Positions 43,126-50,439 of a stretch of 51,468 nt of DNA are shown here, in pieces. This DNA is from Prasinococcaceae sp. CCMP 1430. Lineage: Eukaryota; Plantae; Prasinodermophyta. The notes beneath the pieces were generated by a model that saw only the letters and a list, made by a program, of their open reading frames with translations, had not been told where the DNA came from and did no database searches. Each line of letters begins with the position of its first letter. The stretch's first letter is position 1. Where the stretch lies: NCBI GenBank assembly GCA_013416795.1, contig RQSC01000019.1, positions 277,654-329,121 on the forward strand. The letters run 5' to 3'. The translations under genes were made by a program, and so were the position numbers.

Positions 43126-44635
43126 ATGCCCGCGCTTGACCCTTACTGTAAGCATGTGTTTGGGTTTGGGGTTTGGCTTTCGCGCGCGCCACCTCAGCGC
43201 GCGGATTTATTGGGGCGCACTTTTTCGGCGCGGGGGCGCTGGCAGCGTGTGCGGGGTGGGCGCGGGCCCGCCACACCGATCGCGCCGCGCGCGCCAGCGC
43301 GACCCGGGTCCGAGCCGCGCCGAGCGCAGGGCGAGGCTCCCTCGCGGCCGCGACAGAGGCGGTCGGCCCATCCGATCGCGACGTCGGCGGCGCGCGGCCC
43401 CCACGGCGGCACGCGCGGGCGCGCCGCCTCCGTCGCCGCCAGGGCCGCAAACCACAACGTCCTCTCCGTCGAGGTCAAGGACGGGGCTGGCGGCGACGAC
43501 AGCGATGCCATCCAGGGAGTCGAGCGCCCCGTCATCCTCGGCGTGACGCTACCCGAGGACCGCCAGACGCAGTTCCTCATAATGGCGGCCGGCGCGCTGA
43601 CGTGCTCGCTGGGCTTCGCCGCCCTGCAGGAGTCGGTGTTTCGCATCCCCGGATTTACGTACCCGGGCTTCATGACGCTGGTCACGTCGGCGTGCTATGC
43701 CGCGTGCGGATTCATCGAGATGGGGATCAGCACGAAGGGAAAGTTCACTCGCAACGGCACGTGGAAGAACTACTGGATATTGTCCACGATGACGTTCGGA
43801 GGCATGTTCCTGACCAACTTCGCGCTCAAGTTCCTCAACTACGCCACGCGCATCGTGTTCAAGTCGGCGAAGGTGATCCCGGTGATGCTGTTCGCCACGA
43901 TCGTCAACAAGAAGACCTACAGCCCGCTGGAGTACTTTTCGGCATTCACGCTGGTGACCGGCGTGGCGCTCTTCACGCTGGGCGACGCGGCGGGCGGCTC
44001 GGTCAACTTCAACCCCATCGGCGTGGTGCTCATCACGCTCGCACTTTGCGTTGACGCGCTCACGTCCAACTTCGAGGAAAAGGTCTTCTTCCGCGTGGGT
44101 AAGCCCTCTTCGCAGGCAGAGGTGCTCGGGTACGCATCCCTGCTGGGCTGCTTCTGGTCTCTCATCCAGAACATTTCCCAGGGCGAGCTCGGGCCCGCGC
44201 TGGCCCACGCCTCAGAGCACTCCCGCGTCATTCCTTCGATCTGTGCCTTCTCTGTGCTTGGGTATGTGAGCGTTGGCTTCGTGCTCTCTCTCATCAAATA
44301 CTTTGGCGCGACAGGTACGCACGAACGCGCCGCCGCGTCAGCGCGGACCGCATGTTAAATGCGCCGCCCGTGCTTTGGTTGCGTGCGGCGGGTCGCGCCC
44401 GCCGGCAGTGGCTACAGTTCTGACACGCGCTCGCGGTCGGGCGCACATTGCAGAGGCGGAGATCGTCAAGACCCTGCGCAAGGTGCTTTCGATCATCATC
44501 TCCTTCGCGCTCTTTCCGAAGCCGCTGAACTGGCAGTACGTCGTCGGCTTCGCCGTGGTATGCGCGTCCATCTATCTCACAACCAAGGCGAAGAAGATCA
44601 AGCGCGAGCAGAAGGCCCTCGCCGGCGGCGCGTGA
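43126..44635 (+). CDS. Nucleotide-sugar/PAPS transporter (UAA family, UTR2/4 or SLC35B3-like); intron 44315..44453, possible intron 43148..43297
   Basis: LTNFALKFLNYATRIVFKSAKVIPVM, KKTYSPLEY, LFTLGDA, DALTSNFEEKVF, KTLRKVLSIIISFALFPKP. Multiple TM helices. Confidence 0.88.
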
Positions 44636-45110
44636 TCTCCCAACTCGTCCGACGATTGTTCAAACCCTGCCATCGCTGGCAGGGCGGCAGACACGGCAAC
44701 GCTTCCTCGAGCGTGGAGTCATCATGGTGCCCTCATACACCTACACTACATACGCCTTCGTTACAGATATCAACGCACCCTGCGTGTCGAAAGAGTCTCC
44801 CTAAAATGGGCAGCAGCAGGTCGCTCTAGAGCACAATACGAACGGTGCCCACTAACGCCATCCATCCCCAGGGGTAGAGGCAACCGCGGGATTGCGGTCC
44901 AGTACAGCAGCGAGAGCCTCGAACCGCACGACTATCATACGTGCCGAACGAGATGCCCGTCATCGATGCCACGCCTGCCCTCGCGCGCGCGCGCGCGATT
45001 GACGAGTCCTGCGGTGGCCTCGTGCACAGGCATGTTAGCTAGGCGGTAACTATCTATGAGTGCTACTGTTTTATACTGGGGGGATGGCAGTGCTGTGCGC
45101 ATGCCCCGAC

Positions 45111-45347
45111 CTATTTCGGAGCGCAACCCCCCTTTTTCCTGAACTTGCAGTTCGTCTTAGCGTCGCCTTTCCTGCACTTCTTCTTCGACTTGGCCTTCTT
45201 GCAAAGCTTCTTGACCTGCTTGGCGGAGAGCCTGGCCTTCTTGCGCTTCCTGGCCTTCTTCTTGGCCTCCTTCTTGGCCTCCTTCTTGGCCTTCTTCTTG
45301 GCCTTTTGGGACTCTTTCGACTCCTTGCTCTTCTCGCTCGTGGCCAC
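45111..45347 (-). CDS. Lys/Cys-rich coding exon downstream of the TEP stop; probably an alternative TEP C-terminus
   Basis: VATSEKSKESKESQKAKKKAKKEAKK...LCKKAKSKKKCRKGDAKTNCKFRKKGGCAPK*, with strong AAG/GAG/GCC codon bias. Preceded by canonical intron 45462-45348. No ATG of its own. Confidence 0.55.
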   Translation of the reverse strand: MATSEKSKESKESQKAKKKAKKEAKKEAKKKARKRKKARLSAKQVKKLCKKAKSKKKCRKGDAKTNCKFRKKGGCAPK

Positions 45348-45476
45348 CTTCGGATGGGGCAGGAAAGACAGGGACCACGGGCGCGCATGCAGCGTCAGCA
45401 CGCGGTGGTACGCCCCCCACACGTACAGTATGACTGTGTGCTGCCGCGGCGCGCGCGCTCACCTCACGCCCGGCGT

Positions 45477-48400
45477 CTACGGGCGAAGGAGCTGCGGCAC
45501 GGCGAGCGCGAGTGTCGTGCCCGCGAGCAACGCCAGGGGCGGGGCGACCGCCGCGGCGGCAGCGGGGCTGTCCGAGGCCTCTTCATCGTCCTCAACGACG
45601 ACGACCTTGCCATCCACACGCACCGGATTATCGATGATCACCTCACCGTGGGCGCTCTCCACGCTGTCCGCCCCCACGCTCCCCGCGCCCGCCAGCTCGG
45701 GCACGTAGTACGCGAACATGTCTGATGTGGCCGGAGCGAGGTCATGCACCGCCGCCGAACGCTCCGCGCGAAAGCTCAGACACGTTTCTTCCTGGCCCAC
45801 ACCGGCGAGGTAGATCTCGGCGCCACCCTCGGCCGCAGGATCGGCGCGCTTCACCACCGAGGGGGCGCTCGACGCCAGCGACGCCAGCGAGGCGGGGTCG
45901 GCAGCGTAGCCCGAAAAGACGCCCGCGCGCAGCAGCACCATGCCCGAATGCTCGGCCTGCGCCGCGTTTGGCGAGCTACCGTCAACGCTCGCACAGGCCG
46001 TCACCGAGAGCGCACCGCCAGCAGGCCTGGACGTGTCGTTGACGTATCTCATGCGCAGAGTGTACGTGGGTGCGATGGGCGGCGCTATGGTGTTGTAGCG
46101 CAGCGAGAGCTGCACCAGCGCAATGCCGTCGCCTGACCCAGACAGCGAGACCGAGCCGCCGGGGGAGACGCTCGCACGCTGCAGCACGAGCGCGTTTTCG
46201 CGGTTCACCTCGAAAGTGGCTGTTGCGGCAGTGCCGCCGTCGCTGGCGGTGATCCGCACTGTGCCCTGCGTAGCAGCCAGGGCAGCGGCGTACTCCGAAA
46301 GCGCCTCGAGTGCCACCACAGTGTCCTGCGTTGAAGAGAAGCCACCCTGTGAGTTGCGCTGTGCGAGCAGCCACCGCGCGGCGGGCGCCGCATCCGCGGC
46401 GCGCCCCGCCGCCAGCAATGCCTGCAGCGCGTAACCCGTTGCTTCGACCTCCGACGAGCTCGAGTGCGGGGCATAGGGCAGGGCGTCTGCCGCGAAGAGA
46501 TCAAATGTCGGGGCACTGCCGGTGGGCCAGTACGCCGTGCCGCTGTCGCCGGCGACAGAAGCGGCCAGGAGCGTGTTCACGGCGTCGTCGACGATGCCCG
46601 ATGGGCACGACTCAACGGCCGTGTCCGCGTTCGCACACGCCTTGACGAGCGCGGCGCAGGCAATGGTGAGCGGGTAGCCCGTGAGCCGGTTCAAAGCGTC
46701 GGCCAGCACATCGACTGCGGCCTCAGCGGCAGCCCCTGCCGCGTTGCGCAGCGAGGGGATGCGGCGCGCCTCAGCAAGGGCTGTCAGAACGAAAGCGGTG
46801 AGCGCATCGCCTGGGTTCGCCGCCCCGCCCTGCATCTCAGTGTGGATCACGTCGCCCACCTCGTCAAAGTGGCCGTCGCGCTCCTGGGTGTTTGCGAGGA
46901 AGGCCGAGGCCTGCGAGAGCACGCCGGTGTCCACCGCGATGAACTCGTATGGCTCGGCGGCCGCCTGCGCGAAGACCTTGAGCACGAACGCCGTCAGCCA
47001 TGTCGACGCAGACTGGTCCTGCGTGCCGAAAGCAGAGAAGCCGCCATCGGGGTGGCGGTAGTTGAGCTCGCGCTGGTATCCCACCATCATGTTGCTCACT
47101 GCGCGCGTCTCGGTGTCCGAGTCAAGCTTGTTGACCGCGCTGAGGTAGCTGGCGACGTACACGTTGGGCGCTAGCCCGATCATGTTCTGCTCGCCGCAGC
47201 CGGATGGCATGCGCAGCAGTGACTCGAGGCCCTGCAAAGTGGGGCCCATCACGTCGCCTACCACGCTCAGGTAGGCGCGCGCAGAGCCTTCAACGACGTC
47301 GCCTGGCAAAGACGCATCGAACGTGTACTCTGTAGAGGCGTCTGCGTTGGCCTCATCGCGCAAGTCTATGAGCACGTTCTGCACGGTCTCGCGTTCGAAG
47401 CCCTCCGCGCGCACGACAACTGCGCGCGTGACTGCGTCGGAGAGTCCCACAGCCGCCGGCGTCGTTGCCTGTAGCGAGAGGCCCACCGCCCCAAGCTCGG
47501 TGAAGCGCACGAGCAGCTCGATGGCTGCCGAGCCACCGGCAGGCAGTTCGAGCGCCCCGCCATCGGGAAACCCTGCGACAACCTCCACGCCAGGCGAGTC
47601 GCGCAGCGCCAGCGTGACGGCGATGTCCTCGGCTCCGTAATTGTACACGCCGACGGGGACGGTGAGCGCCTCGCCCCGCACAACGCTGTACGGCAGTCGC
47701 GGCGAGAGGAACAACTCTTTCTTGACCACCAGCTCAGCCGAGGCTACGCCAGCGGTCGCAGCGACGCCCAGCCCGACATCAGGGGCCGACGCGAAGGCGC
47801 TCAGCTCCCACGTCGTGATGGAGTCCGGGGCGGACTGCGCCAGCGACAGAGCGCCATCGGTTCCCACGTCTGCGCTCATCCACACCCATGACTCCGGAAA
47901 GAACTTGCGCACGCGCTTGACCGAAGTCTGCGCGGCACCTGTACTCTTGCCGGCACTTTCCTCGGCCCCAGCGGTTGTAGCCTGGGGTGCACCTTCGTCG
48001 AAGGCGACGTCCGCGGCGCCGTCGGCGAAGGCGGCGCGCTCAATGGCAGCGACGGGCATAGCCTCAGCCACTTCAGCGTCGTCAAAGAGGTATCCGAAAT
48101 ACCCGCCCCCGCTGTACGAATTCAGCTGGCACTCGGTAACGACTGTGGTCTCTGGAGCCGCCAGCGAAACGCCTGCCTGTGCGAGCACCGACGTCGCCCA
48201 ACGCCGCGCGCAGCTGGGGCGGCTGGGCAGCTCCGCCGCGCCAGTCTGCGCCTCAAGCACGCGCTCGGCGGTGAGCGCCGAGCTTCCACCAAGCAGGCTC
48301 ACTGCGCGGTCTACGGCCAGTACAAAGGCACGCGCGCCCGGCGCCGCCTCAACATTGATCGCTATGCGCTCCCCGGGGCGCGCCACGCTCGTGTTGAATG

Positions 48401-50439
48401 AGGCCGCAGCGCTGTGGGCCCCATCGACCGCAGCGGCAGTCACGTCGAACGCCATTTCGTCAGCAACGAGCTCGCCGTCGGGTCCTGCGTACACCGCCAG
48501 CAACGAGCTGGAGGGCGCCATGGCATCAGTGGCGACGAAGCTGATCATGGTGGCGGTGGCACTGGCGGCGGTGGCAGCACCGGCGGCGACCACGCCTCCC
48601 TTGGCTGCCACGACAAAGTACGACACGTCAGCAGTTCCAGCGGCCGTGGAATAGAGCGCGGAGACACTGAACGTCTCACCCGAGGGCACTGTCGCACCGC
48701 CAGCGATGTCGTGCGACGTCGCCGCTAGCAGCAGACCGCTGCCCGACACCGACAGCGCGCGGGAGGAACTAGTGCTGGCGTACACACCGCTGACGGAGCT
48801 TTCCAAGTAAAATCTCGCGCGCGTGTAGCAGCACCCACGAGCGACAGGCTCGGTGCCGCTGCCACTGCCGTATGGCCACGCGGCCCCCTCTTCAACCCCC
48901 TCCCCGGCCGTCGTGTCGTAAACACAAGTCGCCGAGTCGTCAGGCGCCTCAAAAGTCAGCGTCGCGCTTCCGTCGGCGGCCGTTCGCACTGTCCCGGAGA
49001 CCTCCACGCTTTGCGTGCGCTGGCACGTACGCCAGTCGTAGTCCTGCGAGAACGCGCCGCGAATGGTCAACCGTTCGCCGACGTGACCACCACCGCCCGC
49101 GGCCGTGGCCAAAACAGACACGCTCACTGGCACCCCCGGCGAAAAGTGGCGGTCGGCGGAGAGCTCCACACTGTAGGCGTTGCGCTTGGCGTCCACGTTG
49201 GCGCTCGCCTGTGCCACGGCACCAGTTGCAGCCTCAGTGACCTGAGCCTCGACGATGAGCGGGTTGCCGCTGTCAAATATGCTGTCGTACGCCTCGGCAC
49301 CCGCGGCGGTGAGCGCGAGCTCGAGCTGCGCACTGCCGTCAATGGCGCCCTCGAACGTCGCGATGAGCGTACCAACGGCGCCATTTGACCTTGTCGACGT
49401 GCCGCCGACGTCGCTCCCGACGCCTTTCTCTGCGAATTCCGGGAAGCCGCCCCAGTAGTGGTAGTAGCTCTCGTCGGCGTACACGCTCACAGACACCGTG
49501 CCCTCGACGGGCTCGCCGTAGGTGTACGTGGCGCTAACAGTACCGTCAAGCGTCTGATCGCCCTTCACAACGGCAGCAGCGAGGTCGAGGTCGACCTCAA
49601 ATTTGGGCAGCACGTACTCGTCCACAGAGAATTTGGCTGACGCCGACGAACCGGACTCTGGAGCCTATGTGCGCACGCGTGATGGCGGGCGCAACTCGCG
49701 CTTGCAGCGTCAGACTCGCGCACGCACATCCATAACCCAGCCTGCGCGCACGCCCTCAGTCCACACGCACCTCAACGTCGACGGTGTAGATGCCGAGCGC
49801 GGGCTCGGCAGCCGTGGGCAACACGATCTCAACGGCGCCTACCAGGTCGGCATTGCGTACCCAGCGAGCAATGATGACGCCGTCTGGGTTCGAGACGGTC
49901 ACGTGAATCTCCTCACCGGCACCAACCGGCACGAGCGCGGCATCCATAGCGAGCGCGCGAATGCGCACGCTTTGACCGGGCTTGTACACGGGCTTGTCTA
50001 TCTCGATGAGCACGATGGGCGACGCCGGCTCGAGCACAGTGATGGTCGCGTGCACGTCATCAGCACCGGGTGCGGTGGCGATGAGCTCAAAGTTGCCCGC
50101 GGGGAGGTTCGCTGGGAATTCCAGACTACGGAGATCAGGCGCGATCCCGCCACCCCACGTGACCTCCCACGTCGCGCTTGGCGTCGGTGCGTCGTCGCCT
50201 TCCCCGTCGTCGGTGTCTGTGTACAGCCTGAGCAAGATCCGGGTCTCGACGGCTTCCACCGCCCCGAGGGTGCCGAGCGCGGGCGCGACGGCGATGCCCG
50301 CGCGTTCGCCAGCGCGCACGTGTGAGGGTGCGACCACCATAAATCGCGCGGGAGCGGCCTCGGCGGCGAGCGCCGCCAGCGCCGCCGCGTTGACCGCGAG
50401 CGACGCCGCCGCGATGGCGATCCACGCATCCGCGGCCAT
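45477..50439 (-). CDS. Thioester-containing protein, alpha-2-macroglobulin/CD109/TEP family; join(50439..49771,49664..45477), ~1618 aa
   Basis: Signal peptide, DKPVYKPGQSV, FSVDEYVLPKFEV, RKFFPESWVW, PDSITTW, LPYSVVRGE, LRMPSGCGEQNM, HPDGGFSAFG, VIHTEMQGG, GGFSSTQDTVVALEALSEY, YYVPE, hydrophobic tail. 106-bp phase-0 intron. Confidence 0.93.

What the first reader, a model, noticed from the sequence alone, without database searches (positions are those of the whole stretch)
45111..45660. Two possible C-termini for the TEP: a GPI-like tail versus a spliced Lys/Cys-rich exon
Seen: the main frame ends with a spacer and hydrophobic tail (DSPAAAAAVAPPLALLAGTTLALAVPQLLRP*), CD109-like. 14 nt after the TAG a canonical intron opens (45462-45348; GTGAGC, GCTGAC, AAG), followed by a strongly coding-biased 78-aa poly-Lys exon with four Cys. 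An alternative frame overlapping the tail (PGVARGHDTRARRAAAPSPVDAGRE) is open into this donor in phase 0, and in-frame donor-like sites exist upstream (DNP|GTGCGT, DGK|GTC). Inference: alternative splicing could switch between a membrane-anchored form and a polycationic form that binds anionic wall or microbial surfaces.
Basis: partly seen in the sequence, partly recalled or inferred. Interest (0 to 1): 0.72.

Follow-up and report, generated by a model that had tools for sequence, protein, structure and literature searches.

The report
Algal thioester protein switches its tail
The complement-like thioester protein gene of a marine green alga is spliced two ways, giving either a lipid-anchor-type hydrophobic tail or a lysine-rich four-cysteine tail, and that second tail is an undescribed end-module shared by many secreted proteins of this lineage.

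Summary
The minus-strand CD109-like thioester protein gene of Prasinoderma coloniale (PRCOL_00004231) ends in a GPI-signal-like tail with TAG at 45479-45477.

- **Post-stop intron.** Ocean metatranscriptome contigs remove the predicted 115-nt intron (45462-45348). This keeps the hydrophobic tail and leaves the Lys/Cys exon as 3' UTR.
- **In-frame splice.** This fuses the 78-aa Lys/Cys exon in frame.
- **Sister species.** In an ortholog 57% identical, both forms exist as full-length transcripts identical except for a 169-nt GT..AG segment. One ends in a hydrophobic tail, the other in a homologous Lys/Cys tail with all four Cys aligned. The spliced form recurs in a second sample.
- **Population variants.** They keep the Lys frame open through +39 and +27 nt in-frame indels.
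- **New module.** The last 39 aa form a conserved four-Cys module. It sits at the extreme C-terminus of about 20 other secretory-type proteins (chitinase, leishmanolysin, M60 peptidase, copper monooxygenases, FG-GAP/LNR). It has no Pfam or PDB sequence match.

GPI anchoring and polyanion binding remain inferred.

The parts
45480..49664 (-). Coding exon 2 of the TEP/CD109-like gene (residues 216-1610 of model PRCOL_00004231-RA). It carries MG3, bait-region, A2M, TED (GCGEQ) and receptor-binding domains.
   Evidence: tblastn of P0034 on the window gives 100% identity. Pfam domains. Cluster member name.
45618..45623 (-). Distal (upstream) alternative donor GTGCGT, phase 0, directly after ...IIDNP. 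Using it skips the tail cassette.
   Evidence: Joint 45344->45621 (cut +3, GT..AG on the minus strand, skips 276 nt) in run X3. The X3 contigs also break at 45621-45650, as expected at an assembly-graph branch (table 8). Phase shown. The site is conserved in 11 population variants.
45477..45623 (-). Tail cassette: 48 codons (acidic linker VVVVEDDEEASDS, then an Ala/Pro spacer and hydrophobic end) plus TAG. It is coding in the anchor-type isoform and intronic in the Lys/Cys isoform.
   Evidence: Translation. Hydropathy. Hydrophobic ends also occur in the ortholog P0002 and in more distant relatives P0003 and P0004.
45480..45566 (-). GPI-signal-like segment: small residues (S-D-S), a spacer of about 10 residues and a hydrophobic stretch of about 17 residues, ending 2 residues before the stop.
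   Evidence: Sequence inspection and Kyte-Doolittle profile. No GPI predictor was available.
45348..45462 (-). Proximal 115-nt intron, beginning 14 nt after the TAG (GTGAGC ... GCTGAC ... AAG). Removing it gives the anchor-type mRNA, with the Lys/Cys exon as 3' UTR.
   Evidence: Joint 45344->45460 (cut +3) in X1 (a 2192-nt contig continuous from 46900, side 69) and in X3. Splice sites are conserved in population variants.
45231..45347 (-). First part of the last exon: a poly-Lys/Ala/Glu/Ser spacer of 39 codons, predicted to be a long helix.
   Evidence: Ocean variants carry in-frame +39 and +27 nt indels here.
45114..45230 (-). 39-residue four-Cys, Lys-rich C-terminal module (..KKLCKKAKSKKKC..C.F..KKGGCAPK).
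   Evidence: Aligned with 24 other copies in alignment A4, with four invariant Cys. The profile search places it at the extreme C-terminus of other proteins. AF2 mean pLDDT is 88.9.
45111..45113 (-). Stop codon of the Lys/Cys frame.
   Evidence: Its position is conserved in all full-length variants.

Best explanation
The 3' end of the P. coloniale thioester-protein gene is an alternative 5'-splice-site switch with one shared acceptor (45348/45347).

- Proximal donor: the site at 45462, 14 nt past the TAG, gives an mRNA for the annotated 1610-aa protein. Its last 48 residues are an acidic linker plus a GPI-signal-like hydrophobic tail. In this form the last exon is 3' UTR.
- Distal donor: the site at 45623, after ...IIDNP, removes the tail cassette and stop codon. 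It fuses the last exon in phase 0. The predicted product is about 1640 aa with no membrane-anchor signal. It ends in a polylysine spacer plus a compact 39-aa four-Cys module.
- Sister species: the same switch works as retention or removal of a single 169-nt intron.

Shown: both junctions, both isoforms in the sister species, protein-level conservation of the Lys/Cys frame, and recurrence of the module at the C-terminus of many secretory-type proteins.

Inferred: the hydrophobic tail directs GPI anchoring, as in CD109. The Lys/Cys module acts as a non-covalent, electrostatic retention or targeting device for an anionic wall, matrix or foreign surface. On that reading, splice choice moves the protein between a plasma-membrane pool and a wall/matrix-bound pool.
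For: **Junctions in P. coloniale-like transcripts**
- the intron 45462-45348 is removed in X1 (2192-nt contig, 69 nt beyond the joint) and in X3.
- a second joint runs from 45623 to the same acceptor in X3 (depth 3.1 against 9.5). X3 contigs break exactly at that donor.
- both the donor at 45623 and the acceptor are in phase 0.

**Sister species**
- ortholog contigs L002 (5208 nt, ending in an A-run) and L003 (5039 nt) come from one sample. They are identical except for 169 nt with GT..AG ends.
- P0002 (1583 aa) ends in a hydrophobic tail. P0061 (1603 aa) ends in a Lys/Cys tail.
- L004, from a second sample, carries the same spliced junction.
- the orthologs are 57% identical over 1535 aa.

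**Protein-level conservation of the Lys/Cys frame**
- the tails align at score 148, against 84.8 +/- 8.2 for 2000 shuffles, none of which reached it. All four Cys align.
- 10 synonymous codon differences, including TCG/AGC for Ser.
- population variants keep the frame through +39 and +27 nt indels. Their changes are mostly R/K and F/Y. The four Cys, the stop and all three splice sites are unchanged.
- GC3 is 0.88 in the Lys frame only.

**The module on other proteins**
- 24 library proteins match at E <= 1e-3 (best 5e-14). In nearly all the match is the last ~40-85 residues.
- carriers include GH19 chitinase, leishmanolysin, peptidase M60, DOMON/Cu monooxygenases and FG-GAP+LNR proteins.
- several carriers start with signal-peptide-like N-termini.

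**The hydrophobic tail**
- more distant CD109-like relatives also end in hydrophobic tails.
Against: - Within P. coloniale the in-frame junction rests on one short metatranscriptome contig. It has 26 nt on its shorter side and low depth, and the tool flags 'between: not known'.
- All runs were contigs, not raw reads, so isoform ratios are unknown.
- The likely culture transcriptome (X6) did not cover the gene.
- The annotated model, and every database protein at 90% identity or more, uses the hydrophobic tail. Most of these are gene calls on genomic DNA.
- No protein-level evidence exists for either end.
- No GPI predictor or assay was available.
- The wall chemistry of P. coloniale is unknown (PMC7455551), so an anionic binding partner is conjecture.
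Confidence: 0.75

Rival explanations
1. There is only one protein isoform, with the hydrophobic tail. The last exon is merely a 3' UTR that follows a 3'-UTR intron, and the rare upstream junction is splicing noise.
For: - The post-stop junction is the better supported one in P. coloniale-like transcripts (X1 and X3).
- The annotated model ends at the TAG.
- All three frames of the AAG-rich exon are open, so an open frame alone is uninformative.
Against: - A mere UTR would not keep a four-Cys peptide across 57%-identical orthologs.
- It would not restrict indels to multiples of three, nor substitutions to mostly R/K and F/Y.
- It would not show GC3 of 0.88 in one frame only.
- It would not match a peptide module that ends about 20 other proteins.
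- A full-length spliced transcript exists in the sister species, in two samples.
Confidence: 0.1
2. The Lys/Cys exon belongs to a separate small gene or transcript lying downstream of the thioester-protein gene.
For: Gene callers on metagenome contigs report a separate 112-116-aa ORF there. In L002 a 64-aa ORF is called.
Against: - There is no in-frame ATG in the Lys/Cys frame in either species. The called ORFs begin in intron sequence at non-ATG codons.
- The exon begins at a canonical acceptor.
- It is physically joined to the TEP coding sequence in transcript contigs of both species.
- Everywhere else the module is the C-terminal end of a larger protein.
Confidence: 0.03
3. The Lys/Cys form is the main product. 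The hydrophobic tail is only read-through of a retained intron and has no function.
For: In the sister species the hydrophobic tail lies wholly inside the 169-nt retained segment. The sequence of the tail cassette is poorly conserved between the two species.
Against: - P. coloniale has a dedicated donor 14 nt after the TAG. It yields a properly spliced mRNA that keeps the tail ORF, and this is the dominant junction seen.
- L002 has its upstream intron removed and ends in an A-run, so it is a processed mRNA.
- Both species, and more distant CD109-like relatives P0003 and P0004, end in a spacer plus a hydrophobic stretch at the very C-terminus. This is the CD109 family's arrangement.
Confidence: 0.07
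4. Both isoforms exist, but the Lys/Cys tail is not a retention device. It is a precursor of a cationic, disulfide-stabilised peptide released at dibasic sites (antimicrobial-like or silaffin-like), or a sorting signal.
For: - The tail has a net charge of +31, many KK/KR/RK pairs and four Cys.
- Carriers include defence-type enzymes such as chitinase and TEP.
- An unchecked scan note reports another secreted lysine polycation in this genome (s1-389906).
Against: - No processing site is conserved between spacer and module in alignment A4. The spacer varies freely in length, as a linker would.
- The module is always terminal on large enzymes, which fits a domain that travels with its cargo.
- None of this was tested.
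Confidence: 0.15

Closest known systems
CD109 and GPI-anchored invertebrate TEPs (thioester-containing protein superfamily)
   Same: - Same domain set, MG/bait/A2M/TED/receptor-binding.
- Intact GCGEQ motif.
- Signal-peptide-like N-terminus.
- A C-terminal spacer and hydrophobic stretch with no cytosolic tail.
- JGI names relatives P0003, P0005 and P0007 'CD109 antigen'.
   Different: - The host is a green alga.
- Alternative splicing described for TEPs concerns the bait or hypervariable region (PMC7016707), not the C-terminal anchor.
- No TEP known to me carries a polylysine/four-Cys end.
Alternative C-terminal exons that swap a GPI signal for another tail, such as acetylcholinesterase H versus T forms and NCAM-120 versus TM forms (own knowledge, not tested here)
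   Same: One gene makes two mRNAs that differ only at the 3' coding end. One encodes a GPI-type signal. The other encodes a tail that mediates a different kind of attachment.
   Different: - Here the switch is alternative 5' splice-site choice onto one shared last exon. That exon is coding in one form and UTR in the other. In the sister species the switch is simple intron retention.
- The alternative tail is a polycation with a disulfide module, not a transmembrane or oligomerisation peptide.
Basic, Cys-containing heparin-binding C-terminal exons of VEGF-A, and the retention motifs of PDGF (own knowledge)
   Same: Alternative splicing adds a strongly basic C-terminal peptide. In VEGF it is disulfide-rich. 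It tethers a secreted protein to an anionic extracellular matrix.
   Different: No sequence relationship. The binding partner in the alga is unknown. Here the alternative to the basic tail is a lipid anchor rather than free diffusion.
C-terminal domains of trypanosome variant surface glycoproteins (PDB 5m4t, 2jwg)
   Same: These are the best structural matches to the AF2 model of the 39-aa module by two aligners.
- Foldseek: TM 0.71 by query, E 1.5.
- VIA-align: Z 3.9, rmsd 1.7 A over 37 residues for 5m4t, and Z 3.5 for 2jwg.
- Both are small, Lys-rich, four-Cys helix-plus-hairpin units at the membrane-proximal end of surface proteins.
   Different: - The scores are below what the tools treat as reliable.
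- There is no sequence-profile match to any PDB chain.
- VSG domains are followed by a GPI signal, whereas the algal module ends the protein.
- This is a resemblance only.

Membership tests
Thioester-containing protein / alpha-2-macroglobulin superfamily, CD109-like branch | MG, bait-region, A2M, TED and receptor-binding domains in order | tested here: met
   Pfam: TED_complement 1.7e-77, A2M 8.5e-21, A2M_BRD 3.4e-17, MG3 1.6e-13, A2M_recep 1.3e-10.
Thioester-containing protein / alpha-2-macroglobulin superfamily, CD109-like branch | Intact thioester motif GCGEQ | tested here: met
   PSGCGEQNMI is present in the translated ORF and conserved in the ortholog.
Thioester-containing protein / alpha-2-macroglobulin superfamily, CD109-like branch | C-terminal GPI attachment signal: small omega residues, a spacer, and a terminal hydrophobic stretch with no cytosolic tail | tested here: inconclusive
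   The rule-of-thumb pattern is met in P0034 and P0002. No GPI predictor or biochemical test was available.
Alternatively spliced C-terminal anchor switch (AChE H/T type) | Two processed mRNAs from one gene that differ only in the 3' coding end | tested here: met
   Sister species: L002 and L003 are identical but for 169 nt. P. coloniale: two joints share one acceptor, and the in-frame one is weakly supported.
Alternatively spliced C-terminal anchor switch (AChE H/T type) | Both protein forms are made and are located differently | not testable with these tools
   This needs proteomics or localisation experiments.
Any described domain family for the 39-aa Lys/Cys module | Significant match to a Pfam model or to a solved-structure sequence | tested here: not met
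   - Pfam: only noise, E 0.29 or worse.
- PDB profile search: no hit at E <= 1.
- ESM Atlas by features: no usable hit.
- A full-text search for a fragment of the motif found no paper.
Trypanosome VSG C-terminal domain | Shared fold with statistical support, and a sequence relationship | tested here: inconclusive
   It is the top hit by two aligners, but weakly (Foldseek E 1.5, VIA Z 3.9). There is no sequence-level match.
Trypanosome VSG C-terminal domain | The domain is followed by a GPI signal peptide | tested here: not met
   In 22 of the 24 library hits, and in the TEP isoform, the protein ends 2-4 residues after the fourth Cys.
CaaX prenylation box (the tails end C-x-P-K) | A cytosolic protein ending in Cys-aliphatic-aliphatic-X | tested here: not met
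   Carriers have signal-peptide-like N-termini and extracellular-type domains. Position a2 is Pro. The Cys is one of four invariant Cys in a compact predicted fold.

The most novel reading that the evidence does not exclude
The 39-aa four-Cys polylysine module is a previously undescribed, lineage-restricted C-terminal surface-retention domain of Prasinodermophyta. It holds secreted enzymes and immune-type proteins on an anionic wall or matrix, or on foreign cells. It is functionally interchangeable with a GPI anchor. On this reading the thioester-protein gene uses regulated splice-site choice to move one complement-like effector between the plasma membrane and the wall or exterior. That would be an anchor switch conserved since the two Prasinoderma-like species diverged.
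Probability: 0.35. Interest if true: 0.78.

Novelty: new variant of a known kind. Interest (0 to 1): 0.64.

Why it matters
- **Deployment of an algal TEP.** Thioester proteins are core innate-immunity effectors of animals. Here a unicellular green alga of the deepest green-plant phylum has one, and a conserved splice switch appears to control how it is deployed: lipid-anchored, or carrying a polycationic end-module.
- **A new sequence handle.** The same module ends chitinase, leishmanolysin, M60 peptidase, copper monooxygenases and integrin/Notch-like repeat proteins. This defines a domain for the extracellular proteome of an alga whose wall chemistry is unknown (PMC7455551).
- **A practical tool.** If the module tethers proteins to the wall, it could serve as a tag for surface display in these algae.
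- **Annotation.** The current gene model records only one isoform. A second carrier, PRCOL_00006675, appears to have its lysine spacer spliced out by the annotation.

Tried and rejected
- **Word search, Lys/Cys exon alone:** 1618 candidates, none at E <= 0.01. The exon is short and low in complexity, so this says nothing about absence. The later exhaustive profile search did find relatives.
- **Word search, last 240 aa of the main frame:** nothing. The search was swamped by Ala-rich words.
- **BLASTP of the two tails:** no alignment, because of composition filters. I replaced it with a Smith-Waterman test against shuffled sequences.
- **The search for related loci with the two-tail alignment on metagenome contigs:** the tool chose poly-Lys patterns and nothing was confirmed.
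- **Degenerate DNA pattern for KKLCKKA..KKKC on the same collection:** no match. Not even L002's sample matched, so the collection evidently lacks it.
- **L001 (TARA metagenome scaffold):** it is DNA and ends 55 nt after the stop, so it is uninformative.
- **P0003's locus:** another gene starts 44 nt after its stop and there is no Lys-rich frame. The switch is therefore not seen in that more distant relative.
- **ESM Atlas, by features and by shape:** nothing usable.
- **Stop-codon read-through, rejected:** the main frame reads the exon in the Arg/Pro frame, not the Lys frame.
- **Use of the overlapping alternative frame, rejected:** it would need a frameshift, and the in-frame donor explains the data.
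- **Other donor-like sites, not supported:** no transcript supports DGK|GTC, ACG|GTGAGG (phase 1) or GAG|GTGATC.
- **CaaX prenylation and KKXX retrieval, rejected:** the carriers are lumenal or extracellular, and the K/C isoform has no membrane span.
- **Joined isoform not built:** Its exons were handled separately by reference. The ortholog's spliced protein (P0061) came from the database.
Full report
**What is in the sequence**

The finding lies on the minus strand. A 1382-codon open frame (49625-45477) carries the MG3, bait-region, A2M, TED and receptor-binding domains of the alpha-2-macroglobulin/TEP superfamily, with an intact GCGEQ motif.

Its 90%-identity cluster contains the EukProt entry EP00793_Prasinoderma_coloniale_P005757 / PRCOL_00004231-RA (1610 aa). 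This names the organism. That model maps to the window as two coding exons, about 50415-49771 and 49664-45480.

The frame ends in an acidic linker, an Ala/Pro spacer and a hydrophobic stretch two residues before TAG (45479-45477).
- Fourteen nucleotides after the stop there is a GTGAGC donor at 45462.
- The intron is 115 nt, with GCTGAC and a pyrimidine tract, ending at AAG|GTG (45348/45347).
- A 78-codon frame follows (32 Lys, 5 Arg, four Cys, net +31), stopping at 45113-45111.

GC3 is 0.88 in that frame against 0.35 and 0.42 in the other two, and 0.79 in the TEP exon. All three frames are open in this AAG-rich stretch, so an open frame alone proves nothing. The frame has no in-frame ATG.

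**Transcripts of P. coloniale-like populations**

Only assembled contigs of public runs were available.
- In marine metatranscriptome X1, a 2192-nt contig runs unbroken from 46900 to 45463. It then jumps to 45347 and continues for 69 nt. X3 shows the same joint. The skipped piece has GT..AG ends on the minus strand and matches the predicted intron exactly.
- This mRNA keeps the hydrophobic tail and its TAG, so the Lys/Cys exon is 3' UTR there. The stop lies only 14 nt before the junction. By the usual 50-55-nt rule that would not trigger nonsense-mediated decay (own knowledge).
- X3 also has a second joint to the same acceptor, from 45624|45623. It skips 276 nt, at depth 3.1 against 9.5, with 26 nt on the shorter side.
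- X3's contigs also break at 45621-45650. That is where an assembly graph would branch if reads diverge at that donor.
- Donor and acceptor are both in phase 0. This joint therefore replaces the last 48 residues with the 78-residue Lys/Cys exon, for a predicted length of 1640 aa.
- This is thin evidence for P. coloniale on its own. It is one short contig, and the tool warns about such joints in metagenomes.

Its exons were treated separately by reference.

**The sister species settles the principle**

The C-terminal word search found P0002, a full-length ortholog of 1583 aa with a signal peptide. The two orthologs are 57% identical over 1535 aa.
- Its contig L002 (JGI sample 3300016798, 5208 nt, ending in an A-run) has a main frame ending in a different but again hydrophobic tail.
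- Forty nucleotides later, after ...ccttgcag, comes a Lys-rich frame with four Cys.
- The same cluster holds P0061 (1603 aa) on L003 (5039 nt, same sample) and P0053 on L004 (a second sample, 3300018879). Both read ...DDGGSS|GTAEDSKSK... through to the Lys/Cys end.
- L002 and L003 are identical apart from 169 nt (L002 4696-4864). That segment starts GTGAGT, ends CAG, and is in phase 0 at both ends.
- L002 is not genomic contamination. Genomic gene calls of this species are interrupted near residue 135 by an intron that L002 lacks.

So this relative makes both a tail-retaining mRNA and a spliced mRNA, encoding the two kinds of C-terminus. In it the switch is intron retention. In P. coloniale it is a choice between two donors.

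**The Lys/Cys frame is under protein-level constraint**
- The two species' tails align with all four Cys in register. The Smith-Waterman score is 148 against 84.8 +/- 8.2 for 2000 shuffles, none of which reached it. For the Cys part alone it is 101 against 44.5 +/- 6.7.
- Of 53 aligned codons, 21 are identical, 10 differ synonymously (including TCG/AGC for Ser) and 22 differ non-synonymously, 5 of these R/K.
- Ten TARA/Logan genomic contigs of P. coloniale-like populations (L008-L017) add two further haplotype groups. They have +39 and +27 nt insertions in the lysine spacer, both in frame.
- Their substitutions are mostly R/K and F/Y, with T-to-K and two K/E exchanges.
- The four Cys, the stop position, both donors and the acceptor are unchanged.

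**The tail is a recurrent module**

A profile of four tails was searched against 1.84 billion representatives. It gave 24 proteins at E <= 1e-3 (best 5e-14). In almost all, the match is the last 40-85 residues of the protein.

Aligned in A4, they define a 39-residue unit. It has four invariant Cys, a near-invariant leading Leu, a 'GDAK' turn, an aromatic residue two positions after the third Cys, and a C-x-P-K end. A variable Lys/Ser/Ala spacer precedes it. One protein (P0062) has two copies in tandem.

Carriers include:
- a GH19 chitinase;
- a leishmanolysin, whose cluster contains P. coloniale PRCOL_00006675-RA;
- an M60 peptidase;
- Temptin/Cu-monooxygenase and DOMON/Cu-monooxygenase proteins;
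- an FG-GAP plus Notch-LNR repeat protein.

Several full-length carriers start with signal-peptide-like N-termini. The module has no Pfam match, no PDB sequence match and no hit in the literature search for a fragment of the motif.

AlphaFold2 on A4 gives a confident compact model (pLDDT 88.9) of three short helices and a hairpin. Its best structural neighbours by two aligners are the C-terminal domains of trypanosome VSGs. For 5m4t, Foldseek gives TM 0.71 and E 1.5, and VIA-align gives Z 3.9 and rmsd 1.7 A over 37 residues. For 2jwg, Z is 3.5. PSI domains follow at Z 2.1-2.6. These scores are too weak to claim kinship. I record them as a lead.

**How it most likely works**

Shown:
- one shared acceptor, with two donors in P. 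coloniale, or one retained or removed intron in the relative;
- two mRNAs;
- two reading-frame outcomes;
- conservation of both kinds of end.

Inferred:
- The hydrophobic end is a GPI signal. It fits the rule of thumb in both species: small residues, then a spacer of 8-10 residues, then 17-18 hydrophobic residues with essentially no cytosolic tail. More distant CD109-like relatives also end this way.
- The polylysine spacer plus four-Cys module tethers its cargo non-covalently to something anionic. The carrier list of surface or extracellular enzymes and adhesin-like proteins fits a retention or targeting domain. It does not identify the partner. The genome paper states that the wall's composition is unknown (PMC7455551).

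A processing-to-peptide role is the main functional rival.

**Comparison with what is known**

TEP alternative splicing is documented for the bait or variable region, and GPI signals are known for CD109-like TEPs (PMC7016707). I found no report of a C-terminal anchor switch in a TEP, and no paper linking Prasinoderma to these proteins.

Swapping a GPI signal for another tail by splicing is well known in animals, for example acetylcholinesterase and NCAM. So is adding a basic matrix-binding exon, as in VEGF and PDGF (own knowledge). This case is therefore a new variant of a known kind, joined to an apparently undescribed domain.

**Earlier scan notes**

Notes on this window gave the organism name and the TEP reading. 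I confirmed both independently. Another unchecked note reports a secreted lysine polycation elsewhere in this genome. I could not examine it.

**Verdict**

Alternative C-termini are supported strongly in the lineage and moderately in P. coloniale itself. The anchor and binding functions remain inferred.

Noticed in passing
window 44451-45073 (+ strand gene): A 1107-nt contig from run X6 (organism A, probably a culture transcriptome) covers the last exon and 3' UTR of the convergent plus-strand gene up to 45073. That gene is a UAA-type nucleotide-sugar transporter by Pfam on the matching TARA contig. Its end is only 38 nt from the stop of the Lys/Cys exon at 45111, so the two convergent transcripts very probably overlap at their 3' ends.
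   Followed up: partly
window 45231-45300; L008 and L016 equivalents: The lysine spacer is length-polymorphic in ocean populations (+39 nt and +27 nt relative to the window), always in frame. It behaves like a variable-length linker built from AAG/GCC/GAG repeats.
   Followed up: yes
P0117 (PRCOL_00006675-RA) versus P0069: The annotated P. coloniale leishmanolysin model is 714 aa and jumps from ...GGSET straight into the four-Cys module. Metagenome contigs encode a continuous 762-aa ORF that includes a 48-residue Lys-rich spacer. The annotation may have spliced out low-complexity coding sequence as a false intron.
   Followed up: partly
L005-L007 (P0052, 1625 aa) versus L002 (P0002, 1583 aa): In the sister species the first intron (about 126 nt, near residue 135) appears to be open in frame. 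Genomic gene calls read straight through it and produce a protein 42 residues longer. I did not inspect the insert site directly.
   Followed up: no
model me4b2d429208a (window 45114-45230): The best structural neighbours of the 39-aa module are trypanosome VSG C-terminal domains (5m4t, 2jwg). These are also small, Lys-rich, four-Cys units next to a surface anchor. The scores are weak and there is no sequence match.
   Followed up: partly
L002 5110-5145: There is a (CA)n microsatellite in the 3' UTR of the sister-species transcript. P0062, another module carrier, begins with a translated CA-repeat, which suggests a mis-called start.
   Followed up: no
window 45257-45343: Metatranscriptome depth here is inflated more than 100-fold by contigs of unrelated Lys-rich transcripts, with many loose ends and 'goes back' joints. 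Depth in this stretch cannot be used as a measure of expression.
   Followed up: yes
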